Origin: Klebsormidium nitens
Lineage: Eukaryota; Plantae; Klebsormidiophyceae
DNA: 64,000 bases
Direction: 5' to 3'
Assembly (NCBI GenBank): GCA_000708835.1
Contig: DF237411.1
Span: 10,937-74,936 of the forward strand
The notes beneath the pieces were generated by a model. It was not told the origin of the DNA. It saw only the letters and a program-made list of their open reading frames with translations, and did no database searches. The translations under genes were made by a program, and so were the position numbers. Of this stretch, positions 38-55,700 are shown one piece after another (within the stretch, counting starts at the first letter, position 1; each line of letters begins with the position of its first letter).

Positions 38-3000
38 CGAACGCATATTGGCCCAGCTCGTGGTAGCGGTTGAAGCGGCGCCCGGGCACGAACTCGTGCA
101 AGTAGACGAGCTGCCACAGCGTGTAGAGCGTCACTATAAAGGACAGCGTTAGCACGATGGTGCCGCCGGGCCTGAAGAGGGTTAAGGAAAGGGTTTTAAA
201 AAAGAGGTTAAGGGAAGGGTTAGCAGGAAAACACACTGAGACGTGTCTTTAAGAAAGCGTGCAGAGGGTTTCCATCAAGGATAGAGTCAGCACCATGGTT
301 CTGGCGGGTCGAATTAGGGTTAAGGAATAGAATAGAAAAAATAAAAAAAGAATAGAACAAGTTGCTAAGACGAGTTTATTACTGCTTTCGACAGAATGTT
401 GGCACTTGATACTGATCGAGCTCATGACATTTACCCTAAAAATGTAGCTTGAAGTGACCCTTGAGAGCTTTCCCTGTCCGTTCCGTTTTACAACACTGTG
501 TGATCCAGCTTCTTACACCAGGTCTGAATGAGTAGGCGCACTGAAATGAGTCAGATTGCACCTGATCTCTTCACCGCTGACCGACAGAAAACAGTTTATC
601 TTACAAACCTGAAAACTCAAGAAAGACACCGGTGATTGACTGCAAGATATAACACAACTGAAAGCTTACCACTCAAGGTACTTGAAAGCGTAGGGCAGCC
701 CCAGAACTCCTGCCCCGACCATGGCAGTGACATTGTGGAATGCGGAGTAGTACCACTTGGCGGTGCGGTTGCTGGTGATTGGCAGACGGTCGTCCAGCTC
801 CTCGTGCAGAATCGAGTCCAGATTCTTGTCGTGCACCTGAAAAGTAGGGTTGGGGACTGGGTTAGCGATTGATCTAGCTTGACGAGAAGTGGGTCACAAC
901 TTCTATTGGAGCGGGATAGTACATAGGCAGACGGTCGTCCAGCTCCTTGTGCAGAATGACGTCCAGGATTCTTGTTGTGCACCTGAACTTGGGTCATGGA
1001 TCGGGTTGATATTTGATTCTCTTGCACGGAAGTGGGTTATAGCTTCTCCAAAGCAGAAATGGATATTGCCAGTAGGCAGCTGGACGTCCAGCTCCTCGTT
1101 CAGAATGGCGTCCAGGTTCTTGTCATGCACCTGAAGACAGGGTTTAGAATGGGGTTAGGACAGGCGTTGAGTTCGCGAGAAGAGGGTCCACAGCTTCCTT
1201 GGAGCAAGAGTCGAAAGTAGGCAGCGAGTGACCAGCTCCTCAAACAGAAGGTGTCAAGGTTTCAGTCGTGCGCCTGAAACCGGGTTTGCGAGCTGGGTCA
1301 CGAGTCCTTTCAGTCGCTTAAGGAGTTGGACCTTTGATTCAGATTTCGTCCCAGGTACAGGGGAGTTTGAGATCTTAAATCCAGGAGGTTTTGGTTTTCA
1401 ATACAGTGCCATAGCTTTTCCAAGATTGATACGCGTATGCTATCCTGGAAGGAACCCAGATGTGAAGACACTTTACCAGATTATCAAGAAACAATAATGT
1501 ACAAAAGCCGGGTCATTTCGGGAGAGTTTCCAGATTCAAATACCAAGGGTTCAGTCCAGATTCCAGTCAGGCTTGCATAACTTTACCGACTCTTTTGGCA
1601 AACTGCGAGGTTTGAGCAGGGCAGCTTGCAACGGCTCAGAATACAGTCCTTCCCACTTGGCAAGGGGTGATATCAATCAAATCAAGTGCGTGGAAACACC
1701 GCCTAAACCAGGTATAAACACCCTCTACAGACCATCTGCAATCAGGTTCCTCTCAGGCAAGAACTGGCAGCCAGGAGAGAAAGTTGAATCCACTGTCAGG
1801 AGATTGTAAGCTCAAGAGTGAAGCATGAAGACTAAGATTGAAAGAAAAAGGCCGAGTATTAAAGACTAGGCCAGGAGTCAGGTCTTTCTATCACTTTGTG
1901 AGGAACTTCAGAGGTGTTTTTATTTAGCAAGAAGGGGCATTGACAACAGTTACTGTCTTCACACTTAGATGCAAGACAGCATATTAATCAATCCAACACA
2001 GTCTATCAGTGTCCCAGTCTTCATCAAGGTGGGCAAAGGGAGTATGCACCGAGAACAAGCAGCCTTCTTCTAACCAAAGACCCTGCCAAAAAAAGAACAT
2101 GGGAGTACAGGACAGGAGTTACACGGAATGTTATTCCATATCAGCTCCCAATGAACTGTTCTCCAGAATAACACAGGAAAAATATGGGGTTCTGTGAAAT
2201 TGCACAAAAGTTACATTCTCGGACTTGCTTCTTATGTTCCTGGATAAAGGAAGGAGTGAGCTAAGGCCTGATCTGTAGGGGAAGAATAATGAGTGAAGAA
2301 CCAAATGTGCCAATGACCTTGCAGAGTCTGAATTCCTCTCTGGTAAACATCAGTGATATCCCTCTCTGCTGAACATCTGTGATCATGAAGATGGTTCAGT
2401 TGGTGAAGTGAACAGATTGGCACCCAACTGTTCTGCGTTCAAAGTCTGTCTTGCAACGGACAATATATACAAGCACTGTATGCTGGGCGCAGAAAGAAGA
2501 GTTACTAGCAGGGGCAGTATGTCTGAGATGCAGGGCCCCTAAAGGGCACCCTGCAGGTTTGAGGGGCTTGAGAGAAGGGGTGAATGTAGTAGGAACTACG
2601 TGAGAACCAAAAAAGAAAGATTCTCGTTCTTACATCTGGCATGCAGGCTGAGATTGTTTGAAACAGACTGGACATTCTGCCCCTCCAGTATTGTGTGCAC
2701 GCAAAGTGTCCATCTGAGTTGCTGAAAACAAATACTCTACATCCATGCACTCCAGAGACTCGCTTCCCACAGAGGCTCACAGTGTTTGGAAGGGTACATT
2801 TTGAAGAAAGTTTGTTTCTGTCACTTCTTAGTAATATTACCGGTGACCCAACCAACAAAGTTTCCGCATACTCAGCAAATCCCCCCACAGCAATACAAGG
2901 AGAACAGCGCTGAAGGAATCGTTGAACATGAGGGATTCAACCAGGGCAATGAGCACACGTTCAAAGTGATCAACCAAAACTTGGATGTCCAAGAGGGGGC

Positions 3001-3149
3001 AGCTCCAGTCTGATTAACCAAAACGTGAGGCAATCAGCGCAGCTCACCCGTGCAGAGGCGCGCCCCTTTCCGGCGCCCATCTCGCTCATCTCAGCCTCCT
3101 TGGCCGCCCCCGCTGGCGCAAAGTCGGACTCCTTTGCGGGCTCCATCAT
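38..3149 (-). CDS. LHT: Lysine/histidine-type amino acid transporter (LHT, AAAP family). 5' three exons only; the gene continues off the left edge.
   Basis: Exons 3149-3048 (MMEPAKES...ASAR, phase 0), 836-670 ([55 protein letters not shown]) and 171-38 ([46 protein letters not shown]) join in frame across GT-AG introns. [21 protein letters not shown] and [11 protein letters not shown] are recalled LHT family motifs. Confidence 0.92.
780..1310 (-). repeat. Degenerate tandem repeat (~146 bp, 4 copies) of the LHT intron-1 acceptor plus the start of exon 2
   Basis: Minus-strand CAG acceptors at 837-839 (real), 983-985, 1131-1133 and 1274-1276. Each is followed by a recognisable copy of GTGCACGACAAGAATCTGGAC...GAGGAGCTGG. 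Spacings are 146, 148 and 143. Confidence 0.9.
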
Positions 3150-11544: not shown

Positions 11545-11999
11545 CCTGAGAGCGTTTGCTTGCGCTGCGCCGATTGGCACTAAAGCAGCGCTCCTCTCAC
11601 AATCCACTTATGGCAAATGCTGCCAAAACCCTGCCAAAATTAGGTAACCTCGCATATCCTCGTCTCCCCAGCGATTTGGATCCTGGAATGCGAGAGCCTC
11701 AGGTCCAGCCTGAGGAGATGATCAACGTACGAGTTGAACCAGGATCTGCAGTTTTGCCGCCATTTCTCGCGGCTGCTAGAGCTTGACTCCTCGTTGGCCC
11801 ATTGGCACGCAATCTTAAATGTTTCCGGGGGCTGGTTCGAGCGGTCTTGGTTACCCCCCGCCTAGTTCAGTTGCACACGAGGATGGATGCAGGTCCGACA
11901 TCGGGAATCGACTTGCGATACCAGAATATCTGGCCATGTTCTTCACAACCTTTACCGGCGTCGAAGGGGCCCCCATAGTTTGGGCTAGACCATAAGCCC

Positions 12000-13604: not shown

Positions 13605-16600
13605 TCAAACGGAACTTACCACCGGTGCCAAACCCGTAGATACGCGGACTGCCTCCGATCGTCTCTGGTGACGCTGCACCAGAGGGGGCTTCTCGAGCGG
13701 TAGGGACCGGAGCTCCGCGTACGAAGGCAGAGGTATGGAGTCCACCAGGTCTTCTGCAAAGGCGCAAAGAAACGGTGTCAATAATCGCTTGTTGGGCAAA
13801 AGCGTCTGCGCAGGCGACCTCGTTTACTGAAAACTGACTATAAAAGTCGCTGCAAACGAGTACGGAACATGGACTTCGTGACAATCTGGGAGTTTGCGGT
13901 CAGAAGTAACCTTCTGAATCGGCAGGAGCTGCGGCTCAAAATGCAGTGGCGCCACTGAAAATCGCAAGAGCATTTGATTTCGTCTTGTTGAATCCTAGCC
14001 TTCTGCATTTTCGTTCTCAATTTGATCCACGTTCCTGTTTTTCAGCGCCGTCGCTTGACTCGGACGACGTCGGTCCAGCGTCTCCCACGCAATGCAAAGC
14101 GACAGCTAAAAGCGGTCAATGGTCCGGCAATGCAAAGCGACGGCTAAAAGAGGTCAACGGTCCGCAAGGGCACAGTCGCCGGTTCTCACCGTCGAACGAT
14201 GGCAAGCTTATTTCGAAAAACTCTGGCTTGCTTGCCGAAGCTTCCGGCGACTTCCGGCCCGGTTCCGCTGAGCGGCTCTCATAACGGAACGGTGATGCCA
14301 CCGGCGGAGGAGAAGGCGCCACGTGGCTCGCGCCGGGAGGCAGGACTTCCAGGAGCTTTTGCACATGCAGCTGTTCGAAGGGAGGAAACGGTTCGTTTGA
14401 AGGGACATTTGGAGCAATACACGCCGGAATCCGCTCGGTGGCTTCGAGCGGAACCTATGTTAATACTTGTGAGGCCTCGACAGCTGAACGTAAAGAGCTA
14501 AAGAGTGTGCGAGATGAATATTTGCAGAAACCGTGCAAAGAAAGGGGAGACAGACTCCAAGACCGTGCGATCTTTCGCTCGATCATCGTGTGCCTCCCTT
14601 CCTCCCCGAAGCAACATAGACTTGCTTTGAACTCTTTCGCTTTTGCTTTGAGCCCAGTCCCGTTGCATTTCGTGCATTTCGAATGAAGCAAGACCGTCCC
14701 TTCATCAGTCAAGAGCCACCCAGTAACAGAGATCAGCAGCTTCCTTACCTGCAGCCCCGTAAGAATAGTCGAGGCATGGGCCTTAAACTCAGCGAAGTCG
14801 GACTTCAAGCTCCGGTTCTCAGCGAGGCATGTCTGCAAGCCCTGTAAAAAGAAAGCAGATTCAACATTCATCTTAAGGTGATGGCGAAGAGGTATCTGAG
14901 TAAATTGAGCAAGAAGGACGAAGTAATGTAGTCGCAGGCAATCATAGATTTAGTGGAATAAGGCTTAAGCCGTGCGGCAACGCTGCAAAACCATAACGGC
15001 ACCCTTTTCTCAAGGATCCTAGCTGAAGTGCGCGCAGAGTTAAAGGCAGACAGTAGTACCGAAGCAGTTGTTGCTTTTCGTATCGTGCGACATACATCAG
15101 ACTCGAACCAATCTGATGAGACCTCCGGATTGCATCCACATAGATCTCGTAGCTCGCCCTCCATCTCTCGCAATCCATTCTCCTCTGGGAGCTCCTCTGC
15201 AAAGCCGGAAGGACGGAACACAGAACGGAAAGGCTGACAGACAAGCTTACCTGAGAGAGCCGTTCCAAGTGCGCCATCGTATCCACCGGCGAGACGCCTG
15301 CCAACGCACTCGGCCTCCCTGCTTCAAACGGCGTCCGCTCCACCACAGCCGGCCGCCTCCCCGGGACAGTCCCCCCGGGCGCTTTCCCAGGCTCAGCACC
15401 AGCCTCTTTAGGCTCCGGTTTCTCCCCCGGTTCATTCCCCCGGTCTCTCCCCGGGTCACTGCCATGAGCGGCGTTTCCAGCCGGGACTGATTGCCGGTCT
15501 CCATTTCCTGCATCCATAGGCGCACCCACCGACCGGTGCGCCGCTGCGCCGCTCGGTTCTGTCGGCCCCCCTGCAACATATTGCCTGAGAAGTACTTCCA
15601 CGCCTGCGGCAGTACCCCCCGGTGCAGCAACTTCGCTTCGAGTTTCACCTTGTGATTGATGCTCTGGACGTTCACTATGTTCGACTGCGCTGTCGGACTG
15701 TGGCACTGCAGCTCTCGAGTGATCTAAACCGTCCGTCGCGGCGCCGGACCGATCATCTGCTGGCGTGCTTCCCCTTCTCGGTGCAAAGCCGCTCTGCTCA
15801 CTTAAACTACCCCGCTCCGCTGCAGAAACTTCTTCACCAGCAACAGGGGACCCCACGTCATGTCTCTGCCCCCCCTCTTGTTCCCCCCCTCGACTCTCTG
15901 CACGCTCTTCCATTCCGGTGCCCTCCTTCCCCTCCCTATCCTTAACAGACCCCCCACGCCCCATTCCCGAGGAACCGGGACCCTCCGCTTCGCTAAGCTC
16001 CTCAACTGGGCCCACAGCACCGCTGCCCCGCAACCCGCCCACTGCATGGCTGTCTATCTTTGCCTCCAAGTCCCGGAAGCCCCTTTCTAACTCCCCCAAC
16101 AGCCCCTCGTCAACACCCCTGCCGACTCTTCCGTCGTTCCCCCCTCTGCTCCTCTCGTCGGACCCTCCTCTGCCGCTTCCGTCGGAACCCCCTCTGCCCC
16201 GTTCTTCGGACCCTCCCCTCCGAGCCTCCCCCTGAGAAGCCTCTGTTTCTGACATGAATTGCGTACTGCCGCCATCCCCCCGCTTCTTTCTTTTCGCCAG
16301 GCTCTGAATCAACCGCTGCCTCGCCTCAAACCTCGACACCTCCTCGTCAAAATCAACAACCCCCGTCACACCTACTGCCGGTCCCGACTCGTCCTTTGCC
16401 GTTTCTTGCTGCGACGCCTGCGCAAGTTCTTTCTCTTCCCCCCTTTCCTTAGTTTCTGACCAATCCCCTTGACCCTCGTCGTCTGCCACCTGGCGCTCCC
16501 TCATTGGCTGCCGGAGAGGACTGCGGGAATGTTCCAGGTGTTCGAGAAAGTTAGGCGTGCCACCCGGGCGCCACGGCCGCGGCTTCTCCTGGTGTCTCTG

Positions 16601-26949: not shown

Positions 26950-27042
26950 CTCTGCTCTTGTATTCCTGCTATTCCTCGGATTCTAAGAGAAGCTCAATCG
27001 ATCGATCGCTGTTGCGTAAATGGCGGTATATGAAAGCCTGCT

Positions 27043-30899: not shown

Positions 30900-31174
30900 G
30901 GGGCTGTAGCTCAATTGGCAGAGCGCTGGAGCAAGTCTTGGGGAAGGATCGCGCTTTGACCCGCGTGTGTAGATCGGCCGTGAGCCGCGTGTGATGATTG
31001 GCCTTTGAGCCATGTGTGATTAGGGGATTATTGGCCTTGAGCCATGTGTGGTTAGGGGGGATTATCGGCCTTTGAGCCGCGTTTGGTGATCGGCCTTTGA
31101 GCCGCGTAGGTCTAGGTTCAGGCTTTGACCCGCTTGCTTAACCGGAGATGCGGGTTCGAAGCCCGCCAGCCCCA
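30900..31174 (+). ncRNA. tRNA-like Pol III gene with a ~200-nt repeat-filled insert in the anticodon region; identity not callable
   Basis: Acceptor stem GGGGCTG (30900-30906) / CAGCCCC (31167-31173) plus A at 31174. D arm GCTC-AATTGGCA-GAGC (A box). T arm GCGGG-TTCGAAG-CCCGC (B box). Partial anticodon stem CTGG/CCGG. TTTTT follows 6 nt downstream. Confidence 0.75.
30947..31135 (+). repeat. About 7 degenerate copies of a 24-33 bp unit (core ATCGGCCTTTGAGCCGCGTG) inside the tRNA-like gene
   Basis: Copies begin gatcgcgctttgacccgcg, gatcggccgtgagccgcg, gattggcctttgagccatg, tattggccttgagccatg, tatcggcctttgagccgcg, gatcggcctttgagccgcg and aggctttgacccgc. Confidence 0.85.
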
Positions 31175-31180
31175 CACAGC

Positions 31181-31185
31181 TTTTT
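31181..31185 (+). terminator. Putative Pol III oligo-dT terminator
   Basis: TTTTT lies 6 nt after the discriminator base of the tRNA-like gene. Confidence 0.65.
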
Positions 31186-32433
31186 GGAACCGTAAGAAAA
31201 GATGCATGTGCCCAAGCAAGGTGCTTGTTGAACGGTCGACGCTTGACAAAGAAAATGAAACACATGCATGCCCGGGTGAAGCGCCCAGGTCCTGAAGGGG
31301 GCAAAGCCGCAGGGGGAAGATCGATTGGCTTCTCCTATCCCTGGCAGTTCATTCATGTCAGGCTGACTATATCGGTTTGTGTACTTGGTCATGTCCATGG
31401 GACGTCTAGAAATTTGGACTAAGCTTGTCAGCTCCACGGTCGCGCAGGCCTGTGAAACATGATCCAATGCTCCGATGCACCGATCGATTGGCAGCGGGCC
31501 TGCACTTCTTCATAACATCCTTCGAAACATGCATGACCACCTCAGCCGCCCATGAAAACCTTTTTGCGACAGATTGACTTGCCATTTTGACCATTGGCCG
31601 TCGATATCCTGCATGTGCCCCGCGTCGGAGTGGCGGACATTATCGTTTCTGGCCAATCGAATCCAGCATGTGGCACTGATCGTATGAATTGTGATTGCCA
31701 GTGGCATGGCAGACATATAATCTGCATTGCGACTGTGCTTCATGTGTTATATCAAAGTACTCAGCATATAATATCAGTGCGCATGCATGCAATTCCACTG
31801 CGGGGCCCTGCATCGTACGAAATTGGTTACCGTAAACAATGATATCCGACATGATCACCCGTGTTAGTATGTTAATTCTACAACCAATCATTAGGACTCG
31901 ACGATCAGCAGCCTTCCATTTCAATTCACGCAGGCTAGATTTGAGTGACCTGCTTGCGGCATACATCATGCAGTGCATGGTCGAATACATATGGCCTCGA
32001 ACTGGGTACGCGAACATGCAGATCCGCAACTCGATCGAATTGGCGCCACCCGCCTCGGATCTATGTGCTGGCACATGATGGTCATGCATCATCATGCATG
32101 CGCATTGACAAGCAACCGTCCGTTTGCCAAGTCTTCAGTGGGGACTCGAAGCGGCTGAGCTCAACTGCATTGAAGCGCGGCCATGATGCGCCTATTACTA
32201 TGTACATGCTGGGAGTTAACTTGGGTTCATCTCGTCATACTTCCACGGAAATGTTGGTCAACTGGGAGCGCTCAGCATCCGCCATGAACGCACTAGATGT
32301 GGCCGCCACGAGTGGATGTGAAGATTCACCGCTTGCGAAATTGTTCCATTGCGGACAGATCAACAAGGTAGCATGCACTGCCTGGTTGGGGGCGGTCTCG
32401 ACTCTCTTATTGCGGCATCTATACAAGCCAACC

Positions 32434-42587
<10,154 letters not shown>

Positions 42588-43688
42588 GATTGACCTTATC
42601 AGACTCCTGGAGGGGCATGCAATATATTAGAGAAATCCTCATACAAGATGTTCAACACTGACTTTACACAACATAGCATAGGAACAGATTACACCACTTC
42701 AAGGAGCGGATCCTCGAAGGGCTTCTGGCTTCGCAGGCCCCAGATGTGCACTAAAAGTCTTTAAAGGTGACATGTTCAAACAGATTGTGGAAAGGTTGGT
42801 GCTGGCATGATAGGAGACCGGCGATGCGGCTAATTTGAACTTTCTAGAATGGTCTGGCGATGGCAAAAGGAAGGCAGACAGAGATGCTGAGAGCCATTGC
42901 CAGAAGCGTACAAAGCTGGTTGGGACAGCCCCGTAAAGCGAGCCGTGATAACAGTTTTGTCAAACACAAATTATCGTACCGGAGAGTACCACCAACGTGA
43001 TAAACGACGCGACATCAAAAAAAGTTTCTGAGATTGTCACTGTCCGCTCATGCAGATCTTCATTTACTCCATTCGGCCCACAGAAGCACGTAAAAATGTA
43101 CAAGAAAGATAAGAACGACCAACAGTCTATCCCTTCAATTATCTCGCGGACGCTGAAGTTGAAAAGTGGGACTGCATGGATTCATGCAACAAGCAGAAAA
43201 GTAGCTCGCAGAACCTTATTATGGATCTCTGAAACCCAGGCACCTGACTAAGGAGATCCACCCCAACCAACTGATGCCAAGGTGCTCGCTAAGGAAACGA
43301 GGTCTCACCAGAATAACCTCCCTCTTGCAGTGACAAACTGCAAGAAGTTAGCCCATACAAAGTTTGTGCTTGGAATGCAAGTTTTCCACAGACAACCTCC
43401 TCTTGGTGAGGCGATCGCAGTGGCCAGCTCTGTACTCTGAGCACTAAGCGCCTGTCACTAATGCGCTCAAAGTGTATACTCCAAATCCACCTGTGGAAAG
43501 CATACGAGTAATGGGTCTCTTGTTGTTACATACGACTTTTTGTCAACACTGATGCAGAAGCCCTGAAAACGAATGCTTTTGATGGAACTTAAAGCAGGTC
43601 AGCTCTTTCTGGCAATTCTGCGCTTCTCTTGCCGCTTGTTCCGAGCAGTTCTGGACGCCTCTGGACCCATCCCCTGGGAACACCTGGG

Positions 43689-43865
43689 AAACCCTAATTT
43701 AGGGTTCCGCTCTAGAGCTCGTCTTTTATAATATTGGGTTTTGACACTCGTTCTCAAGTGCATGCCTTTCGAACGGCCTCTAAGACCGAGACAGTATTAT
43801 CTAGTGTTAAGACGCTGATGCGCAAAAGTGGATAAGAACAATTTGAGCTGTCCCCCAAACCCTAA
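43689..43865. promoter_or_regulatory. Telo-box motifs in the divergent promoter between the UBP and ICMT-like genes
   Basis: AAACCCTAA at 43689-43697 sits in the palindrome AACCCTAA-T-TTAGGGTT (43690-43706). A second AAACCCTAA is at 43857-43865. Confidence 0.5.
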
Positions 43866-44139
43866 TTTTGCGCAGCAACTCGAACTGGCTTTCAACCTTC
43901 CTGCTTTGTTCTGCGGCCAAGAATCCTTGCGCCCGTTTTGGACAGCTTTTGAGCGAACGTAATACTGATAGAATGCAAGCATCCTTCTGAAATCTGTTCA
44001 GACGCAGCACAAGAAAGCAATTCAGCTGGACGGGCAGCGTGTGCAGCTGCTTGAGCCAGGTGCAGCCCATTGTCAGACATTGACCTCCGCATCAAATGTA
44101 GTGGTGGTGCAATCCAGGTCGGTGGCAATTGGACGCAGT

Positions 44140-47100
44140 ATGGCGCCCTCAGCCGCTCACTCTGCTTGCGCAAAGCTGACCAGTAATGCAGCTCCGGGGC
44201 TTCAACTGGGCAGCAACAGATGCCAGGAGAGCTCTGTGTTAAGTACCTTCTCTTGTCCCAGGGCTTCTTTCGCGTCAAGTTGCAGATATCTTCCATCTTA
44301 TGCTGGCAATTCGTCTCAAATGGGGTCTGCATGCGTGCCGTTGAATGCTGTTACGAGAGTCAGCGGTCCGCCAGCAAACGCACAGCATTTGCATCGGGAC
44401 AGTAACTCGCAAGCTTCAAGTGGGCGGCGCCAGCTTTTGATTGCTGGCAAAAGTCCTGTTGGTCATAAGCATCGGTGGCGTCAGCAAGGGTGTCCAGAAC
44501 AACAGGGAAGAGGGAAGTTGGTAATGGTGCGAGCGGCTGCTGATAATGGTCCTCCCGAGGGTGGCGCCTCCGAGTTGCCGGGGCCGGGAAAAGACGATCA
44601 GATTGTGAATGAGGTTGTGGGCCAAGCGAGGGATGCACTGAGGGGAGCCCTAGAATCCGCCACGAATCAGGCACTGGAGCGAGGTGCCGGGAGCGGGGAC
44701 AATCCTGAGAGTAGAGAGGAAGCACTAGAAGCGGCGATCGATGCAAATGCAGAGGGGGCGCTGGGGAGGGGGGCCGCCAGCCGCGAAGTGAGCGGGCGAG
44801 AGGAAGGTGACAGGTGGCAGGAAGAGGAGGGCGCCACTTCTTCCAGCCGCGCAAAGGGGGGAGAAGAGCAACGGCAGGATAGCCAGAGGCGCTTCGAAAC
44901 AGAAATGCGGCGGGACGTCGAGCAGAACACGGAGGCCCGGGGGTTTGTGGTGGACGAAAAGCTTCGAGACCCGAACAGAGTGCCGGCATTTGCGCCAGAA
45001 CAGCTCGGGGGAGGCGCGTATATGACCGTCCAGGAGCGAGGGGGAGAATCTGGCGGATCAGAAAAGCAGGAGGGGCGGAAGCTGCCGAAAAGCGGGTTTG
45101 TGGTGGATGATTTGGGGGACGGCGGGGGGGTGGAAGTGATTGGAGGAGGGGTGTCGGCGGGGCCAGATATTCTGACGCAGCGGTTGCGACGGAGTAGAAA
45201 GCGCCTTTTGATGAAGATGTTTCAGGGGCTTGAAGTGGGAGTGAAGACGGCAGTCACGGATCCAATGGTGAGTAGCGGTCCCAATTCCGATTCAAAGGTA
45301 CCAATTCAGATTCTTTGGTGGTCCTTCTTTGCAGCGACGAGTGCTGATGCAGAAATTACTCACGTTGTTCAAAATTACGAAGAGGCATTTAATTCAGCAA
45401 AACCAGGTATAAGTGCTGTGATAAAAGAGGGCGCCGTGAATTGTGGTGCACAAGGGAATGCCGAATTGTCACACCATCCGAGTCGGTGGCATATTGAATG
45501 CGCATTTGGAGCCCTTCGAAAAGGTTATCAAATGTTTGACAGAGTGCCTGCTCTAGCGGTGTCTTTAGGCCTGCTTGCCCTTGCTTTCGGCAGAGTGGAA
45601 CTTCATTTTGAACAATCAAAGCAACGCACCCACCTGCAATTCGTCCGATTGCTTTGCCTCTTTTTCCCCAGCTCCTTGCCTCTACCAATCAGCTGGGACA
45701 TGCATTGCTTGTTCTTTTTGCTTTGAATGTTGGCGCCTTCATGAAGAACCAACTTTTCGCATCATCCCCTTAAGCCTTTGTCAAGACCCCAGAGCTAGTG
45801 GCGGGAGTGTGACTTCACATGCACTCTTCTGCATGGAAGCGCAAAACTTTCGAGTCAATAACTATCAAAGCTGCTGTCACAGAGTCCAAGAAACAGGTCC
45901 AATCAGAGGTCGCCAAACCAGAGAAGCCCTCCCGTCTCCTGACCCCTCTGTCCATCTTCCTCTATGTATCTCACCAAGTAAGTCGCAAGCTAGGCGCGTG
46001 CTTTTCGACGCCCTGACATCCCTATGCTGTTTCTTGGCCTCCCCTCACATATCCTTCTTTTCTTTCAGGGCGCCATCGCCCTCCTCTGGTTCTTTCTCAC
46101 CCACCAAATCGAGCGCATCCTCGACTGGACAAACACTGGCGTTTGGTACTCCCGCCTCCTGAAGCTCGCCGGCGCCGCCTTCACTCTCCTCCCCCCCATT
46201 CTCCTCCTCGTTTCCTACCCCCTGGAATGGTTCCTCGTCACCCTCAACAACATCCTCACGGGGGACCCCCTAGCCAGTATCGGCTTTGGGCTGCAAGTGG
46301 CCCTGATCTACTACCCTATAACCTTCTCCGTTTTGGCCGCGATCGCCGGGCTCGAGGGCACGCGCCAGCTGGCGGTGTCCCGCGTGACGAACGACATCAG
46401 CCGCCCGTTCACACCGCAATTAATGCAGCTCGTGGGCATGGCGTGGTTCCTAATCATGGTGCCCGGCCTGCTTTTGTATAAGACGGCGATCGGCTGGGTG
46501 GGCTTCATGACGGCGTTCTATGTGTCGTTCTTCGTCAAGAGCGCCATCGCGCGATTCGTCGGGTACACGGTGCAGCGGACGGAGGGGGATCCCCAGTGGG
46601 CGCAGTCGCCGGCGAACCCGCGGGAAATCGACCCTGAGGTGAGGCATCTTCTTTGTTTTTCCATCTCGCAAAACCTTTTAAAAGCACTTTTCAGACTTCT
46701 TCAAAAGGATTGTAGTCTTCTTTTGACGCAAGTCCTCACCTAAGAGGCGCTTCTAATTTAAAACCTTCACAACATTGGATTTATCGAGACATGCTTACCG
46801 AACGTGCTCAAGCTTTTTCGGGCTTTTCTTGTAAGCACGTGCTCACCTGAGAGTCTCGTTCCAAAAGTCATTATCATTTTTCCGAAACTTTTCGGAGGGC
46901 TTTCGTGACCCCGAGAGGTCGTTCCAGACGATGTCATTCGCCGTCACATCTTGTAAGCGACATCTGGGCCCAAAGCCGCTCCAGGTCGTCGAGTCTCCGG
47001 ATGTGTAGTTGAGGGTTTTGAAAGGCCTAAGCAGCTGGCCCCAAGCATCATAAAACTCATTTCAGCTTTTCGCCACCATCAAGTATACTGCACGTTGTCC

Positions 47101-48908
47101 TTCCAAGACCCGTGCCATCTTCAAAAGGAGTACCCATTGGACACTGGTACTCGTTCTTACACCCTCTCATATCACATATCTCCACTGAAAGCCCCTCGGA
47201 AGCTCCTCAAACTTGCGAGATCCGCAGATTGCCTGCGCACCTCTCAAACCGGAGACCATTCTCAAGAGTCTGATTCTTATGGCCCACTATACTCGGACGC
47301 CCACGCACACCCCGTTCGGACGTCCTTGTTTACATCTCACTCAACCCGCAGCTCGTCATTGAAAGCCCCTAGGGTCCTCTCCTGTGGCATCCGCAAACTC
47401 GGCCCAGGTTTCAAGACTTCTGACGTTTCAAAACGTTCTGCGCTCCACACGTGTTATGCTCGGGCCCCGGACACCTGCGCTCACCGTCTTCGGACCGTCC
47501 TTCCTTCCATCTTACTCAAATCTGCAGATGTACGCTGTAAACCCCCATAATCCATAAATTCGGTAAAGTCAACCTGCGCAACTTTCAAGCTCGAAACAAA
47601 TGTGAGATTATCTTTGCAGTGGCGCATCATATTCCGAACGCCGACGCGCGTCGTCTTTGGACTGTCCTCTTAATCGTCCTACTCAAAATCGCAAATTTAC
47701 GCTGAAAGCGCCAAGAATCCGCAGACTCTGCTCCTGACCAAGCCTCATGACGTTTTGAAACACGTCTCTCCCGCTGTAGTGGCGCATCATGCCCCGGACG
47801 TCCACGCGCGTCGTCTTTGGGCTGCAGTTTGCAGATTTACGCTCAGCGCCTTCAAATATTGAAACCGGCAAACTCTTCCCGCTCACTTCTCATACTTAGC
47901 AAATGTGAAAATCTTATCTACGCAGTGGCGTATCATGCCCCGGACGTCCACGCGCGTTGTCTTCGGACTGTCCGTCGTTCTTCTGCACTTCCTGGTGATG
48001 CTCGAGTCGTCGCAGTGGACCAAGCTCTTCTTCGCCAAGATGCCTCTGTGGGCGAAGCTCATTCACACCATCGGCGCGCTGTGGCTGCTCACCTTTTGCT
48101 ACTACGTCAACACGCACTCGTCCGACTTCATCCGGGAGTACTTCGAGCAATACGTCGTTCCCAGAGTGAGTGATTTGACACTAACAATCAACTAACCGCG
48201 GCGATTGATTCCTGTTGTTTTACATTGGGGCCGGACAGAACTCTCCGTCTCGAAGCTTTAAAGAAGTCCTTTGAATAGGTTTGCATCTTGTCTAGTGAAA
48301 TATACTACGATCAAGCTCCCCTCTAGGTGTTTGCCGTTTGTCATAGGACTCCCTTCCTATAGGGAAACCTATACGTGGAATACAGTGGTTGAATCTGAGC
48401 TTTAGCAATCTGGTTTTTGACCTTGCATCAACCAAGTGCGATCGAAACTTCAACCTCAAGCAGTCGTCGTGGTCATTCAAAGCTGCAATCTCGTGCAGGA
48501 TCGGGAGCACTTGAAACATTTGAGGAGATTGAAGTCTGAACACTGTGAAGAATGGTGATGCTCGCAGCAACTTCCGGAATAAAAAGGGGTCAGCCCGCTC
48601 CAGACCAAACGCCGCATCGTGTCAAGTCACTGACGCGCCACGTGTCCCGTTCGCTGCAGGAAATCGTGAACGAGGGCCTCTACCGCTATGTCCGTCATCC
48701 CATCTACGCCTCCTACATGCTCCTTTTTGTTGCGTACGCATTCGCGATGCGCGCGCCCATCTCCGCGGGTTTGCTCGGTGCCGTCTCCCTCTGGTATTAC
48801 AACATCCGAGTGGAGATTGAGGAGGCGAAATTGGTGGGGCGGTTTGGACAGGACTACGTGGACTATATCCGCGAGGTGCCTTACCGGTATTGGCTTGGCG
48901 TTTACTGA
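44140..48908 (+). CDS. Plastid-targeted ICMT/PEMT-like (isoprenylcysteine carboxyl methyltransferase family) membrane protein
   Basis: Exons ~44140-45267 (Ser/Ala-rich transit-like start, VMVRAAAD, acidic linker), ~46069-46638 (multiple TM helices), 47926-~48165 and ~48660-48908. The end reads VVPR|EIVNEGLYRYVRHPIYASYMLL...EEAKLVGRFGQDYVDY...GVY*, which carries the RHPxY and EE ICMT-fold motifs. From memory it resembles Arabidopsis At5g59500. Confidence 0.85.
47590..47970 (+). repeat. Tandem copies (3) of acceptor plus exon start in an intron of the ICMT-like gene
   Basis: AG|TGGCGCATCAT...ACGCGCGTCGTCTTTGG copies start at 47620 and 47780; the real exon starts at 47926. Spacings are 160 and 146. 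Confidence 0.9.
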
Positions 48909-49780
48909 GTCACAATACTTTCTATTGAAAGCTGAGCGAGCTGGTACAGAACAGCAAACACTGAACGGTTTTGTGGGATCGGAGGATGAGTCACTTCCCG
49001 ACCTTCCATTTTAAGTCCTGCAATTTGGCACTGCTAGCGCTCTGAGCTATTCCAAAGCCCAAATCCGGAACTGTCTCATGGCATGCATGTATTTAAACAA
49101 AGGGTTGTCGATACCATTATCCAGAGAATCACGCCATATGCACGCTGCGATTGCGAGCTATATACTTCATATGGCCGGTCTGGTCAATCCCGTGCTCTCT
49201 CATGCGGTTCGGCCCCGCCCGGTAATGTGAGGCGGATGCATGTAGTACGCGTAGTAGAGCTATCGACCATGCAACTTAAAATCGTCCGATACTAACGCCT
49301 TGAGCATATCGCGGTATGTATGCATACTTAACCGATGCTAACCAAATACGGCGGCACGCTTACACACATGTGAGCCGCGCCACTTAGCCAGATCAATAAA
49401 GCCGGAGCATCGCGCGCAGGAAACGTACCATGTACTGTCGGTCCTGTGGCCAACATTTCTTCGGGTTTTAGGGTAAAAAAGAAATTAGCATGCCTCTGGA
49501 CCTATGCCAGTACCGCATGCGCACTTTTCGAGCTCCTTTGCACATGTGCAGCCACGTACACCATCCCGGCCAGCTGCCTGCTATATATGTCTGTAGTGCA
49601 CCATGTTTAAAGAATGACTGGTCGCGGGAAGGAGGCAATGGTTGCCATCAGAAAGAGGCGGTGCGCATATGCAACAAGTATCAGAACTCCAGTCTTTTCC
49701 TTCGAGACGCCGGGTCTGCGTCTTCATCAAAGTTATGCACTACTAGGACGGGCAAAGCTCATGGAGGATCAACGGGCCGG

Positions 49781-52700
49781 TCACGCAATGGGCGATGAAG
49801 CATTCGCTCCATGCCGTTCTAGGAAGGGAAGGTGATGCAGAGGGGGCGATTTGCCAAGGGAGTTCCACAGGATGTAGTCGCCCTCGACGACCTGCCAAGA
49901 AAGTTGTGCGTAACCGTTTGCTTTGTTTAAAAACCCAAGAACGAAATCAAAGAGCCTGAAGTCAAGCGGACAAACCACAACGGACTGCGCATTGCATGTG
50001 ATCAATTCCCAAGTGGTCCAAGCAAGTCGTTCTCTGACTATTTGAATCTACTTGGTTCATCTGCCAAGATCCAAAAATTCTACCTGCAGTTTTCAAAGGC
50101 TGCCAAGACACAGGGATGTGTCAAAGAGGACTCTTGAAAAAGCTGAAGAGGCTCAGATGGGTCTTGGATGACGGAAACTCAACACAAAACTGCGCCTAAT
50201 TTGAGGAAGCGGGCCATATCCACCGGTCACTTACAATCCAGCGCCCTAAATTCTCCTGCCCTTCATCCGACGTGGATCTTAGTAAAATCGATTTGAAGGG
50301 TTCTCCTGACGACTACAGAAACGTCTCCCATGATTGACAGCAAGCTCTCAATTAACAGAATTTCGAATCCTGCGTTTCTTGTCGGAAAGGGTTTGCGGAA
50401 TCGTCCCCTCCGGAACCTCGACCGCATTGGAAAGTACGGCCTGCTTTTCGAGAGACGTAGAACGACAAAAGCTCGTCAGAGCATTGGCCGCCTTGATTGC
50501 AGTGTTGCTTCACCTCGTAAGTCGCTTCGACGGAGGCCTTTGCCGGAGGGTAAATCAGAACCTTGGAGGTGTCAATCGCGGTTTCAGTCAAGGAGCAGCC
50601 CGAAACCCTGCATGGAAGACGAGAGAGCTCGACGAAGTTTTTTGCCGCTTTCTGCGGGGCGTCTGCATGGAGCATAACAAGACGACCAAACAGTTGGGTT
50701 GACCGTATTTGAAAGACATTCACACAAATTGAAAAGTTTTTAGCCAAGACCTTCACCTTGTGGATTCAATCCTAAAAAGCACTGAATACTTTTCTGACGA
50801 AGTATAAAAGTGTACCACTTAGAGGAGCTGTGTGGCTTCCGGTTGAAACAGATAGGACCAGCGGTCAACAGGCGGTAAAAGAAACTCAGGACATACGAAT
50901 GACTGTAGAAGAGTCACTTCGGTGGCCTCACTTGAAAGAGACGCGCGCATGACTGTACTGATCCCAGGCGAACGGATCGGCCCACGTGGCAGGCCGGCTG
51001 GCGGAGCTGGTCGTGGCGTCATCATCCACGTCATCGGCCTGGGAGATACGATTCCAACTTTTTGGAAAGTGCCTTCATGATCCCTGGAGAAGACGACTGC
51101 CTTTTACAAAAGTACCACTTCGTTGCTGACGCCACGTCGGAAGGGCGTGAAACCGTCCGTAGAATCAGAGATGACAGCAGAGATTGGGCGCCCCAAACCC
51201 CAAAAAAAAGGTTATGTACAGATACTTCAAAAAAGGGGCCATGTAGGTAAGCGTTTGCTCTCAAGTTTCTCGTGGGCCAGACGGAAAAAGCACAACGCAC
51301 CAGCTGCTAAATGGGGATTTGATCGCACGTCGTAAGCACTTGACAGTAGTTTTCAACCCGCGGTGGCGTACTCACAATCTGACCCTTTAGCAGATTCGAA
51401 CTCTGGTCGACCTTCAATGCACGACTCCTTTTTCTCGCGCTCCACGAAAGTCCTCACCGTGCAATCCATTGGCCCGGCCTTTAAAATTTCAGTGCCCGGT
51501 TGTTTCGTCCCGGCAGCCTTTTATATACATCGCTGAAAGCGTGGCTTTTCCGGTGTCTCCTCGAACTACCTCTCTTCCTTTTCAATCTCTGATCGAGAAA
51601 ACTCAACGATCCCTAATCCGAAAAGTTGACAAGTAGATCTTACCGTGTAGTCCATCGGCCCCGCCTCAAGCTTTGTAGTGCCCTGTTTCTCTTTCCCGGC
51701 CACTTTAAGCACGATCTCTGAAAGCCTGGCTTTCCCAGTTTTCCCCCCGAACCATTTCCCTGCTTTCCATTCCCTTATCGAACAGTATAATGGCAATTCT
51801 CACCGTATAATCCATCGGCCCGGCCTCTGGCTTCTCAGTGCCCGGTTCTTGATTCCGGGCCGCTGTAGCACGGTCGCCAAGAGCGTGGCCTCCGCAGTCT
51901 TCCCCCCGAACTATTTCCCGTACCTTTCGAAAACCCTTATCAAAAAAGTTCGACGAAGAAATCTCACCGTGTAATCCATTGGCCCTGCCTCAGGCTTCGC
52001 AGTGCCCGGTCCCTTCAACCCGGCCGCAGTAAGCACCGTCGTTGAAAGCGTAGCTTCCCGGGTCTTCCCCCCAGACCATCTCCCTGCCTTGCAATCCCTT
52101 ATCGAACAAATTTTATGCGAATCTCTCACCGTGTAATCCATCGGCCCGGCCTCTGGCATTGTAGTGCCCGGTCCCTTCAACCCGGGCGCTGTAAGCACGG
52201 TCGCCGAGAGCGTGGCTTCGCCGGTCTTCCCCCCGAACCATCTCCCGGGCGTAACCACCCGCCACACCAGCGATCCGTCTTGAGGCGCGAGCGAACCAAC
52301 GGAGGGAGTCCCTTCCACCGATACAATCGTCCTGCGAGTAGAAACAGACCAATTTGTTAGTGGTTAAGTATTTGTAATGACTGGATCTGCTTAGACCAAA
52401 ATCACGCGCCACGCCAGCGAGCCGTCCTGGGGCGCGAGCGAACCAACGGAGGGAGTCCCTTCCACCGATACAATCGTCCTGCGAGTAAAAAACAGACCAA
52501 TTTGTTAATGGTTAAGTATTAGTAATGACTGATCTGCTTAGACCAAAATCACGCGTCACACCAGCGAGTCGTCCTGCGGCGCGAGCGAACCATCCGACGG
52601 AGTCCCTTCCACCGACGCGATTGTTCTGTAATTAAGGATTGAGGTTAACAGGTAAACCCAGCATATAGGGGTTCTCCAACAGTGAAAACTGGACTTGGTT

Positions 52701-55700
52701 AGGGCAAACCACCCGCCACACTTGTAAGCCATCCTGGGGCGCGAGCGAGCCCACCGACGGAGCCCCTTCCAACGACGCGATTCACCCTCCATAGGGGCAA
52801 ACACAAAGATTGCAAAGTGGATTCATCTAGAGCGGATTGAAAAACGTGCAGCCTTGCCCAGGCTCATTAAGAAGGTTCAGCTGGTGAGAGCATCAGACCT
52901 TAAATTGCGTCGCTGATAAAGCTCTATGGAAAGGAGCCCCGATGGGTTTGTGGGGACACGGATTGGTTTGCAAAGCACCCCGCAAGCCCGATGTTGTGCG
53001 ATGGGTTTTGGTTTCCTTTGTTGGGCTAGGCCGAATTGACTTAGTAGGCCGAATTGACTTAGTAAGGGACTGAAGCATGGTGAAAGTCAGATCCCTGAAA
53101 GATTTCTAGATTTGTAAGTTCAATGTTAGGAAACAAACCAATGATTACAAAATTCATATGAGCCGATCAGGTTCCTGATGAATGGCCTTCCGCAATCCAA
53201 GAGACCCCCACGCCAACACTTTAGCGCAGACTACGGAAATAACGAGACCATCCGGTATGCAAGGGCAGAGCTTCAAAGAACAACCTGCCGGGTACGACCA
53301 AGGATTTGACAAGACGAAATGAGTTTTCAGATGCAAAGTCAGTTGCCATATATAGGAACGCACCTTCCAGGAAAGGGTATGGTTAGCGTGCAGTGTTCCA
53401 AACTGCTCTCCTTTCGGAGCCCCTCCATTAGCGTCAGTCGTATGAGCACCGCCGCCTTCGACTCCGAAAGCAGCTGGATCTGGAGGAAGCCGCGGATGGG
53501 CGCCTTTTCACACCGTCCGGGGGCCTGGTAGCGGGCGAGTGTGAACAGGCCCAAGGGAGGGGACAGGCAGAGCGTGGCGCCGTAGGGGGTGGGCTCGGGA
53601 GACTGCGAGAAGCAACGTCAACGCGGGACTCAGAATTTTATTCGATTTGAGCTTTCTAAGGAGATTTTGCGACATGGGTCCTCTGTCGGCTCAAGATACT
53701 CGGCACACTTTCTTCGTGGTATATGCCCAGGTGTTTCTACAGTACCGCGACAACTTAGGCCTTTTAAGATCGTTGCGGGCTTCCAACAACGCGTCTTAAA
53801 GACGTCAAATGGCTTGCAATCGACGTGCATCTCAACGGAAGCTTGTATACTGCCGTTGCGCTGCATGGTTGCCTTTGACAACGTTTCTTTTCTTCAAATC
53901 AGATCCTTAAATGCATTTTCTCGCCGTTCGAAACGGATTGTACTTCACGAAGGGGTCCGCACCTGTGCATTTGGATGAACTGAAAGCGCGCGCACGCTGG
54001 CGCCTCTAGGAAACGACAGTGGCACGGTGACGTCAGGCAGGCCCTCCAGGTCGGCGCGGCATACGACCTCCCCGCTGATGGATACGACGTCCTCCACTTC
54101 TGGTCTGCGGACAAGCAGAAATAAACTTTCCTTGGACTTCAGGACGGAATTTTTCGAAGCGCCAGGTGTCGTCTGTGCTGAGGATCAAAAACGGGGCACG
54201 GGATCACAGAATTAAAGCATTGAGAGGCTTCTGTCAATCAGAATCAGAAAACGTCCGGCCACAAGATGAAAGTTGAACCAAGCCGGATTGAGTCCACTTT
54301 GCTGTAGTTCGTGGTTGTCAAAGGCCTCGAAGGCGTAATCCGTTGCGTCCAAGACTGTGAGGCACCAGAAATCGGCACAGAACCGACTCCGCTCGAGGAA
54401 TAAATGGACAGCGCTCACGCCGCTTCGTATCTGGGATTTTGATGCTCGATTTCGTTCATCCAAAGCCGATCGTCTCACCTGTCGAAAAGAGCTGCGGTGA
54501 CCCTCTCCCTGACCATCAGAAACAGGCGCTGCTTGCCGCGGTACAGGTAGGGCTTCCAGTACGGCTGCGTCAGATCGGCGGGGGGGACATCCGCTGCGCC
54601 AAAGCCGTTTGACGCAAGGGCGGACGTCAGCGAGGGGTTCAAGTCCAGGGGCCGTCCTGAATCAGACAGTTTCACGGGACTCGTCAAATTCGCGACCCCA
54701 TTGGTTGGCAGAGCTTCTTGGCATCCTTGCTTTTGTACTACGAGGCTTTGATGATCAGTTGAGGACCGGTCAGTCCGCTTGACAAACGGGCTTCAATCAG
54801 AAAGTTTCGAACCATTACACCTTTGCAACGTTCTTGAGCGCTTTTCGACGCCTGACTGGTACAGGTGCCTTCTCTTGATAAGTTTCTTCAGTTCAAGCAA
54901 TGGTTGAGCAAAGAAAGGAGGTTAGAGTGAAATATTCCATCAGAAGAGGTTTTCGGCCCTTCAATACAAGTATCCAATCCCGCAACGTTTGCAGGAATGA
55001 CGCTCATTGACAAGAGGCTTAGAATTCCATTTCGTTGGATGGCTTGAAGCTATCACATCAATTGCTTGATGCTTGCAGATGGAAGAAGATGCGTCTTCTG
55101 GCCTCTTGACGGCCTACTTCTATCCTGAAACAGAGACCTGCGTTGGCAAACCTAGATTGTTCCGTGACTGAAGACCAGAATCAGAAGGTCACAATTGTCT
55201 CAAGATAGGACTGACGCTTTAACGCTTACCATATCACTAAGAACCTCAGAACCTGCCGTTACAACCATCCACCAAAGCAGCAAGGGGGCTCACCCATAGG
55301 CATGGCCCCAGCTATAAATGTCCGCAGTGCATCTTTGTCCTCCTTCCTAAGAACCCCCGCTGACGAGCCCGCCGGTTCCGTTCTAACACTCGGTACTCCC
55401 CCACCTTTCTGAGAGCCGCTCTTTGCGAAGCCCGTCAGACTGTCTACCAGGCCGAAGGAGTAGAGAGAAGCAGCGGAGGGCGCACTTGGGGGGGGGATTG
55501 CGGGAGGGGGCGTCAGAACGTTACCGAGTGCGGCGGCGACAGCGAGAGCCCTGTATGGAATAGAGGGGTGCGAGAACTCTTTTTGCTTGTATCTTTTCTT
55601 GGGCCCGTTTTTGTTGTTTCCTACAATTTGCAACTTCCTTTTGAAGTGACCTAGGGTCTTTTCGATCCGAGAAAGTGCAATTGTTCACCACCCCTTCGAA

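What the first reader, a model, noticed from the sequence alone, without database searches (positions are those of the whole stretch)
780..52790. Recurrent nucleosome-sized tandem duplications that straddle splice junctions, in four unrelated genes
Seen in sequence: LHT, UBP, the ICMT-like gene and AP5M1 each have an intron end filled with degenerate copies of the adjacent splice site plus exon edge. Measured spacings are 146/148/143 (LHT), 138 (UBP), 160/146 (ICMT-like), 147/147/160 (AP5M1 acceptor side) and 162/164/160/186 (AP5M1 donor side). Two shorter UBP cases are 74 and 55/54. The units share no sequence between genes, so this is not a transposon family but a repeated local process. Established knowledge: the nucleosome core wraps 147 bp, repeat lengths run about 160-190 bp, and tandem duplication across a splice site is a proposed route to intron gain or sliding. 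Inference: a chromatin-templated duplication mechanism is extending introns at their boundaries and leaving arrays of decoy or alternative splice sites. Candidates include Okazaki-fragment or linker-break repair. I know of no description of this as a genome-wide system, but could not search the literature.
Basis: partly seen in the sequence, partly recalled or inferred. Interest (0 to 1): 0.82.

Follow-up and report, generated by a model that had tools for sequence, protein, structure and literature searches.

The report
Exon-edge tandem duplications, roughly nucleosome-sized
In four plant-like genes, stretches of about 150 bases that span a splice site have been copied head to tail into the neighbouring intron, again and again and in at least two related species. 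This lengthens the introns and leaves rows of spare splice sites, but what sets the 150-base size is still unknown.

Summary
Every local direct repeat with a period above 100 nt lies on an exon edge, in the 64-kb window and in about 47 kb from a sister species. Shuffled sequence gives none. There are eight arrays in four genes, seven at acceptors and one at a donor.

Each unit is part intron end, part exon edge. Successive spacings have a median of 148.5 nt (IQR 145-160, n=26). The arrays share no sequence, have no dispersed copies and have no terminal inverted repeats, so they are not transposons.

Independent Logan assemblies of a sister species carry arrays at four of the five array-bearing exon edges they cover, with different copy numbers. 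A third species has copies at one of those edges. The arrays are therefore old, still turning over, and not assembly artefacts.

Random 150-nt placements that spare exons would straddle a splice junction only about 34% of the time. All arrays do, so the junction bias looks real, though the sample is small.

The nucleosome or Okazaki-fragment explanation fits the size. It also fits a breakpoint shared by the two AP5M1 arrays. It remains untested, and no compositional periodicity was found.

Corrections: the 138 spacing belongs to LHT, the UBP spacing is 141, and the "ICMT-like" gene lies on the + strand with no ICMT domain.

The parts
118..341 (-). LHT-like gene, exon 3 acceptor array. The real unit is 118-255, with the exon edge at 118-171 and the AG at 172-173. 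One upstream copy lies at 256-341. The period is 138 and the copy has lost its AG.
   Evidence: (family D9). LHT identity rests on PF01490 and LHT-named hits.
778..1290 (-). LHT-like gene, exon 2 acceptor array. The real exon is 669-836, with its first base at 836. Three upstream copies each carry CAG plus about 56 nt of exon edge and start at 926, 1075 and 1220. Spacings are 145/149/145.
   Evidence: (D6).
33870..34069 (-). UBP gene, acceptor of exon 33679-33928. One upstream copy carries CAG plus about 52 nt of exon edge, with a period of 141. The sister species has four copies here.
   Evidence: (D11); sister species. UCH domain.
35829..35923 (-). UBP gene, acceptor of exon 35612-35844. A 21-nt copy of the acceptor plus exon edge lies 74 nt upstream. 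In the sister species the same edge carries a 159-nt duplication.
   Evidence: (D2); sister species.
39291..39459 (-). UBP gene, three tandem acceptors 55/54 nt apart. Each unit has about 42 nt of intron and about 13 nt of exon edge. The real exon starts at 39303. The repeat is not present in the sister species.
   Evidence: (D7).
47275..47980 (+). Copies of AG plus 45-52 nt of exon edge lie at about 47780 and 47620, with decayed copies near 47450 and 47290. Spacings are 146, 160 and then about 160-170.
   Evidence: (D8, D14). Sister species and third species.
52248..52795 (-). AP5M1-like gene, acceptor-side array. The real exon's 5' part (about 82-84 nt, first base 52331) has three upstream copies starting at 52478, 52625 and 52785. 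Spacings are 147/147/160.
   Evidence: (D1, D12).
51453..52247 (-). AP5M1-like gene, donor-side array. The real exon's 3' part (118 nt, last exon base 52130) has four downstream copies, each with a GT donor. Spacings are 162/164/160/186. The exon-side end of this unit abuts that of the acceptor-side unit at about 52247-52250.
   Evidence: (D2-D5).
52130..52331 (-). The functional AP5M1-like exon (202 nt, 67 codons after a split codon). It is the only place where an acceptor half and a donor half are contiguous, and it is conserved in the sister species.
   Evidence: The adaptor mu-subunit identity is only weakly supported, by PF00928 on a neighbouring exon.

Best explanation
These are small, self-renewing tandem arrays seeded by local duplications of roughly 140-160 bp that span an existing splice junction.

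Shown: each unit is an intron end plus the adjacent exon edge. The copy that stays joined to the rest of the exon remains the working splice site. The other copies now lie inside the intron as spare acceptors or donors. They decay with distance from the exon, and new copies appear next to the exon. The arrays persist across species while copy number changes, and they account for a large share of the length of the introns they sit in.

Inferred:
- The primary event has a preferred length near 150 bp, set by a chromatin-scale or replication-scale ruler. One nucleosome and one Okazaki fragment are the obvious candidates.
- Later copies arise by unequal exchange or slippage within the array.
- Exon edges are favoured sites of origin, beyond what tolerance by selection alone would produce.
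For: - Location: every local repeat with a period above 100 nt in the window and in the sister contigs lies on an exon edge. Shuffles give none.
- Size: spacings have a median of 148.5 and an IQR of 145-160, n=26.
- Unrelated units: eight arrays share no sequence.
- Prevalence: a systematic exon-edge scan finds copies at 5 of about 53 junctions, and only noise elsewhere.
- Geometry: only about 34% of tolerated 150-nt placements, and 14.5% of 55-nt placements, would straddle a splice junction.
- Other species: the sister species has arrays at the same AP5M1, UBP and membrane-gene exon edges with different copy numbers. Examples are UBP 4 copies against 1, and AP5M1 acceptor side 4 against 3. 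A third species has copies at the membrane-gene edge.
- Age: old copies in both species share CGCGTCGG where both real exons have TGTATCGG. The window's nearest copy shares a derived base with the window's own exon. So the arrays have old roots and have also expanded recently.
- Gradient: identity to the real exon falls with distance, 91/80/74% on the acceptor side and 84/82/78/69% on the donor side.
- Shared breakpoint: the AP5M1 acceptor unit and donor unit end within a few bases of each other inside the 202-nt exon. Two adjacent phased particles or fragments sharing one break site would produce that.
Against: - There are no chromatin or replication data. No ~150-nt periodicity appears in CpG, G+C or WW content.
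- The size is not universal: 55 and 74 nt in UBP, 119 nt in the sister species, and 217-241 nt in the third species.
- No primary junction is young and clean enough to read microhomology or filler bases.
- The junction enrichment rests on about 8 origins in about 110 kb. Some of them are adjacent, and exon-anchored copies stay detectable longer than purely intronic ones.
- Splice-site use was not observed.
Confidence: 0.55

Rival explanations
1. There is no junction-specific mechanism. Duplications of about 150 bp arise uniformly along the genome. Those inside exons, or containing whole exons, are removed by selection. Those wholly in introns decay quickly. Only junction-straddling ones, anchored on a constrained exon edge, stay recognisable.
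For: A third of tolerated placements straddle a junction anyway. Introns cannot be aligned between the two species while exons are 80-90% identical, so old intron-only duplicates would be invisible. Exon-derived parts of copies stay more similar than intron-derived parts.
Against: Several copies are young, at 86-95% identity. At that age intron-only or intergenic duplicates would be just as visible, yet none with a period above 100 nt exists in about 110 kb. Doubling the detectable lifetime of straddlers still gives only about a 50% expectation per array, against 8 of 8 observed. The 7-to-1 excess of acceptors over donors is not predicted.
Confidence: 0.25
2. The arrays are kept by selection as functional rows of decoy or alternative splice sites, for example for regulated unproductive splicing or extra isoforms.
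For: The same exon edges carry arrays in two or three species. All donor copies keep GT and a strong donor context. Use of the first donor copy would add an open, in-frame 54 codons. The nearest acceptor copy in AP5M1 has a branch-point-like motif and tract almost identical to the real site.
Against: Copy number and unit length differ freely between species. Copies decay with distance, and older ones lose AG. Extra conservation around the spare donors is not significant (permutation p = 0.19). Use of the nearest AP5M1 acceptor copy would run into a stop codon in the intron-derived part, by my own reading of the sequence.
Confidence: 0.1
3. These introns were created by tandem duplication of exon sequence carrying a proto-splice site (the Rogers-type intron-gain model).
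For: Tandem duplication across AG|GT is an accepted route to new introns (PMC2891723). The membrane-gene intron of the third species consists almost wholly of copies.
Against: Units contain non-exonic intron sequence with its own branch-point-like motif and pyrimidine tract. The intron parts are not derived from exon sequence. The introns extend well beyond the arrays, and the junctions are shared by all species sampled.
Confidence: 0.04
4. It is an assembly artefact, or a transposon or introner family.
For: None beyond the general tendency of short tandem repeats to be mis-assembled.
Against: Independent Logan assemblies of other species show arrays at the same sites. There are no dispersed copies, no similarity between arrays and no terminal inverted repeats. 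Every unit contains sequence from its own host exon.
Confidence: 0.02

Closest known systems
Human F7 intron 7 minisatellite, whose first 37-bp unit spans the exon 7 donor (PMC1557585)
   Same: A head-to-tail array whose first unit straddles the exon-intron boundary. The true donor is therefore followed by a row of identical pseudo-donors inside the intron. The AP5M1 donor-side array has exactly this layout.
   Different: F7 is a single locus with 37-bp units on the donor side only. Here units are mostly 138-186 nt and mostly on the acceptor side. About one junction in ten is affected in the sampled region, and arrays are present at the same edges in related species. Silence of the spare sites has been shown for F7 but not here.
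Tandem-duplication model of intron gain and intron sliding (Rogers model; Drosophila cases in PMC2891723)
   Same: A local tandem duplication that includes splice signals changes exon-intron structure without disrupting the protein.
   Different: That model duplicates exon sequence with a proto-splice site and creates a new intron. Here an existing junction, intron sequence included, is duplicated. No new intron position arises, and the intron only grows.
Satellite DNA with nucleosome-length monomers (about 150-180 bp; general knowledge, not checked in a paper here)
   Same: Tandem units with a preferred length close to one nucleosome, homogenised and turned over by unequal exchange.
   Different: Satellites form long non-genic arrays of hundreds to thousands of copies of one family. 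These are arrays of 2-6 copies inside genes, each made from its own host exon edge.
Introner transposons that create introns, reported to insert in nucleosome linkers (PMC9860276; the linker preference is recalled from memory of Huff, Zilberman and Roy 2016)
   Same: A chromatin-scale ruler has been proposed to shape intron evolution across many genes.
   Different: Introners are mobile families with shared sequence. These units share nothing between genes and are copies of local DNA.
Okazaki fragments sized by the nucleosome repeat, and flap-processing duplications in yeast rad27 mutants (recalled from memory: Smith and Whitehouse 2012; Tishkoff et al. 1997)
   Same: They offer a replication-based source of duplications with a length scale of about 150-165 nt and boundaries phased with nucleosomes.
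   Different: The link is purely conceptual. No replication data exist for this organism, and the reported rad27 duplications are mostly shorter than 110 bp.

Membership tests
Boundary-spanning minisatellite (F7 IVS7 type) | Head-to-tail repeat whose terminal unit spans an exon-intron boundary, so that the splice site is repeated in the intron | tested here: met
   All eight arrays.
Boundary-spanning minisatellite (F7 IVS7 type) | Unit length in the minisatellite range (about 10-100 bp) | tested here: not met
   Only the 55-nt UBP array fits. The others are 138-186 nt, median 148.5.
Boundary-spanning minisatellite (F7 IVS7 type) | Pseudo-sites competent but silent, with the authentic site chosen by position | not testable with these tools
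   No transcript data were available. Sequence shows only that many copies keep GT or AG and their context.
Intron gain by tandem duplication (Rogers model) | The duplicated segment is exonic, and the new intron is built from exon-derived sequence between the GT of copy 1 and the AG of copy 2 | tested here: not met
   Units carry 42-100 nt of non-exonic intron sequence, and the introns extend beyond the arrays.
Intron gain by tandem duplication (Rogers model) | The intron position is novel relative to relatives | tested here: not met
   The same junctions exist in the sister and third species. Distant outgroups were not examined.
Transposon or introner family | Multiple dispersed copies sharing sequence | tested here: not met
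   The blastn self-comparison finds only local tandem hits and no similarity between arrays.
Transposon or introner family | Terminal inverted repeats or other element ends | tested here: not met
   No inverted repeats flank the units.
Satellite DNA with nucleosomal monomer | Monomer of about 150-180 bp | tested here: met
   Median 148.5, IQR 145-160.
Satellite DNA with nucleosomal monomer | Long homogeneous arrays of one family at many loci, outside genes | tested here: not met
   Arrays of 2-6 copies, each of a different sequence, inside genes.
Tandem exon duplication or mutually exclusive exons | A whole exon with both splice sites is duplicated and the reading frame is kept | tested here: not met
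   Only one edge of the exon is copied. Most unit lengths are not multiples of three, and copies carry frameshifts.
   The size matches the 147-bp core and short repeat lengths, but the organism's own repeat length is unknown. Units of 55, 74, 119 and 217-241 nt also occur.
   No MNase or Okazaki-fragment data. Indirect hints point both ways. The two AP5M1 units share a boundary, yet there is no compositional periodicity.

The most novel reading that the evidence does not exclude
In this plant-like lineage a chromatin-phased or replication-phased mutational process preferentially duplicates particle-sized (~150 bp) segments centred near splice sites, especially acceptors. It affects roughly one junction in ten. 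That would make it a major and previously undescribed driver of intron growth and a standing source of new alternative splice sites.
Probability: 0.3. Interest if true: 0.8.

Novelty: new variant of a known kind. Interest (0 to 1): 0.6.

Why it matters
How introns grow, and where new splice sites come from, are open questions. Tandem duplication across splice signals is an accepted idea, but it is supported mostly by isolated cases.

Here about 10% of junctions in the sampled region carry such duplications. They have a sharp preferred length near 150 bp, continue to turn over in related species, and add up to roughly 4-5% of the window.

If this holds genome-wide, it would give a measurable mutational source of intron expansion. 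It would also provide a natural experiment on how the spliceosome chooses among identical tandem sites. And it would offer a sequence-level readout of a nucleosome-scale or Okazaki-scale ruler acting on the germline genome, testable directly with MNase-seq and RNA-seq.

Tried and rejected
- Organism identification failed. Rfam and tRNA scans found nothing useful. An exact look-up of a single-exon gene found no record. Protein searches returned only unnamed Logan ORFs as close relatives. Named land-plant proteins (Marchantia, Ginkgo, angiosperms) match at 31-39%. SRA run numbers appear in no paper.
- The sister-species LHT locus was not recovered, so the two LHT arrays have no cross-species check.
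- Literature searches found no genome-wide description of junction-straddling ~150-bp duplications. They found only the F7 and Drosophila analogues. The Anthoceros genome paper mentions only 'very short arrays' of tandem repeats.
- A sequence signature of phased nucleosomes was sought by autocorrelation of CpG, G+C and WW content, and none was found.
- Extra conservation around the spare donors looked striking by eye but is not significant.
- A bias towards unit lengths that are multiples of three is marginal. By hand count of exon-proximal units, 7 of 11 qualify, with orthologous arrays not independent. I dropped it.
- Telomere-like AACCCT motifs in the intron parts are better read as branch-point and pyrimidine-tract sequence.
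- A lariat or reverse-transcription origin was considered and rejected. The intron parts (42-100 nt) reach well beyond the likely branch points, which lie about 25 nt upstream.
- One fuzzy-regex script timed out.


Full report
**1. What is in the window**

The window is gene-dense, about 51% G+C and rich in introns.

Four repeat searches agree with one another:
- Tandem Repeats Finder.
- The repeat finder.
- A blastn self-comparison at E <= 1e-3.
- An ungapped offset scan requiring at least 29 of 40 matches at offsets 15-600.

There are no dispersed repeats at all. Every significant direct repeat is local. Five block shuffles of the window gave zero hits in the offset scan.

The local repeats fall into two groups.
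- **Short periods.** These are 24 nt inside a coding low-complexity stretch, 38 nt at 14089, 24-32 and about 92 nt at 30938-31116, and 55 nt at 39296. The last of these is one of the splice-junction arrays (it lies on a UBP acceptor).
- **A tight cluster at 138-186 nt.** It occurs at six places: 118-341, 778-1290, 33870-34069, about 47275-47980, 51453-52247 and 52248-52795.

**2. Gene context**

- The LHT-like gene is confirmed by PF01490 and by hits that carry LHT names.
- The UBP gene is confirmed by UCH domains.
- The AP5M1-like gene has only a weak adaptor mu-subunit hit, PF00928 at E = 9e-4.
Its pieces hit no ICMT family. I call it the membrane-protein gene.

Exon limits were fixed from open reading frames, GT/AG sites and conservation against sister-species contigs, where only exons align.

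**3. Anatomy of the arrays**

Every array with a period above 100 nt, and also the 55-nt and 74-nt cases, consists of an intron end plus the adjacent exon edge.

Acceptor-side units:

| Array | Intron part (nt) | Exon part (nt) |
|---|---|---|
| LHT exon 3 | about 84 | 54 |
| LHT exon 2 | about 89 | 56 |
| UBP exon starting at 33928 | about 89 | 52 |
| Membrane-gene exon starting at 47926 | about 95-110 | 45-52 |
| AP5M1 acceptor side | about 64-67 | 82-84 |
| UBP exon starting at 39303 (55-nt unit) | about 42 | 13 |

- At the UBP exon starting at 35844, a 21-nt copy lies 74 nt upstream.
- The one donor-side array, in AP5M1, has 118 nt of exon and 44-47 nt of intron.
- The working copy is always the one contiguous with the rest of the exon.
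- Spare donors all keep GT in a strong context. Most spare acceptors keep AG, and older ones have lost it.
- In AP5M1 the acceptor-side and donor-side units end within a few bases of each other, at about 52247-52250 inside the 202-nt exon.

**4. Related species**

Protein searches with neighbouring long exons found only unnamed Logan ORFs as close relatives. Their contigs come from two other species.
- A sister species, run SRR23617307, has exons 75-94% identical in nucleotides and introns that do not align.
- A more distant species comes from runs SRR14092358 and SRR14092359.

The sister species has arrays at four of the five array-bearing exon edges that its contigs cover (the 55-nt UBP array is absent, see below):
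- **AP5M1 acceptor side:** four copies, spaced 148/136/141/159.
- **AP5M1 donor side:** two copies, spaced 184/168.
- **UBP exon orthologous to 33928:** four copies, spaced 119/145/157/142, against one in the window.
- **UBP exon orthologous to 35844:** a 159-nt duplication where the window has only the 74-nt remnant.
- **Membrane gene:** a copy 156 nt upstream.

Further observations:
- The 55-nt triple acceptor is absent from the sister species.
- The third species has copies 217 and about 241 nt upstream of the same membrane-gene exon, with a longer exon part of about 112 nt.
- No other local repeat with a period above 100 nt exists in about 47 kb of sister sequence.
- This excludes an assembly artefact.

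**5. Age and dynamics**

- Old acceptor-side copies in both species share CGCGTCGG where both real exons read TGTATCGG. Those copies therefore predate a CpG-type change that itself predates the species split.
- The window's nearest copy shares a derived base with the window's own exon and is 91% identical to it. Its intron part is 95% identical to its neighbour's. So it is recent.
- Identity to the real exon falls with distance from it.
- Among copies, exon-derived parts (67-85%) stay more alike than intron-derived parts (36-77%).
- That pattern fits new units being spawned next to the slowly evolving real exon. It does not require selection on the copies.
- The apparent extra conservation around the spare donors is not significant (p = 0.19).

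**6. Is the size special?**

- The 26 well-defined successive spacings in the two species have a median of 148.5, an IQR of 145-160 and a mean of 152 +/- 14.
- Eight arrays of unrelated sequence exist. Six window arrays have units of 138-162 nt, and a seventh origin reaches 159 nt in the sister species.
- Longer duplications would be easy to detect, and none is present.
- The exceptions are 55 and 74 nt in the window, 119 nt in the sister species and 217-241 nt in the third species.
- A characteristic scale near 150 bp is therefore real, though not absolute.

**7. Is the junction association special?**

I used conserved blocks as an exon map for 32.3-63.4 kb.
- Of 150-nt placements that avoid lying inside an exon or swallowing one, 34% straddle a splice junction. 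For 55-nt placements the figure is 14.5%.
- All arrays straddle one.
- Allowing straddlers twice the detectable lifetime raises the expectation to about 50% per array. That still makes 8 of 8 unlikely, on the order of 1 in 100 to 1 in 1000.
- Several arrays are young enough that intron-only duplicates of the same age would be visible.
- An unbiased exon-edge scan finds copies at 5 of about 53 junctions and only noise elsewhere.
- The 7-to-1 acceptor excess is suggestive, at about p = 0.07 two-sided.
- The sample is small, and the two AP5M1 arrays are adjacent to each other.

**8. Mechanism**

Shown:
- Local duplication across existing junctions.
- Expansion within arrays.
- Intron lengthening.
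- Long persistence with turnover.

Inferred:
- A chromatin-scale or replication-scale ruler sets the size.
- Exon edges are preferred sites of origin.

The unit size and the shared AP5M1 boundary fit either two adjacent nucleosomes or two adjacent Okazaki fragments. I found no compositional periodicity and cannot read any primary junction.

Other explanations fare as follows:
- The main rival is uniform duplication filtered by selection and by detection.
- A selected decoy or alternative-splicing role is possible but not favoured.
- Intron creation in the Rogers sense, transposons and artefact are excluded or very unlikely.

**9. Comparison with what is known**

- The closest single example is the human F7 intron 7 minisatellite, whose first unit spans the donor (PMC1557585).
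- Tandem duplication as a source of new intron positions is documented in Drosophila (PMC2891723).
- Introners show that chromatin can shape intron evolution (PMC9860276), but they are mobile families.
- Five literature searches found no description of recurrent ~150-bp junction-spanning arrays as a genome feature. The library covers open-access papers only.

**10. Verdict**

- I rate the finding a new variant of a known kind, with moderate-to-high interest.

Noticed in passing
window 30900-31175 (+): A tRNA-like gene. A clean acceptor stem, D arm and T arm are split by a 184-nt insertion in the anticodon-loop region, and the insertion consists of 24-32-nt tandem repeats. ARAGORN finds it only when long introns are allowed and calls it tRNA-SeC(tca), which is doubtful. 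It could be a disrupted tRNA gene or a tRNA-derived element.
   Followed up: partly
window 32333-48909 versus sister contigs (L004/L001 and L005/L007): The block carrying UBP, the membrane-protein gene and the next gene appears inverted in the sister species relative to AP5M1. There the UBP 3' end lies about 1 kb from the AP5M1 3' end. Beyond the equivalent of 48909 the sister species has large Laminin_G_3 ORFs that are absent from the window.
   Followed up: partly
window 51968-52129 (-): The first spare donor unit of AP5M1 is exactly 162 nt long and stays open in the exon's reading frame. Use of that donor would insert 54 in-frame codons that partly repeat the preceding peptide. By contrast, use of the nearest spare acceptor would meet a stop codon.
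   Followed up: no
Its close relatives are known only as unnamed Logan ORFs.
   Followed up: partly
window 16128-16213 (-) and 14089-14164: One is an in-frame 24-nt repeat (3.6 copies) inside a 520-codon low-complexity ORF. The other is a 92%-identical 38-nt tandem duplication of unknown context. These are the only local repeats clearly not on a splice junction, and both have short periods.
   Followed up: no
window 52320-52326 and L001 3250-3256, versus the older copies: Both species' real AP5M1 exons read TGTA where the older intronic copies in both species keep CGCG. This looks like double CpG decay in the functional exon, with the ancestral state preserved in its own pseudo-copies.
   Followed up: partly
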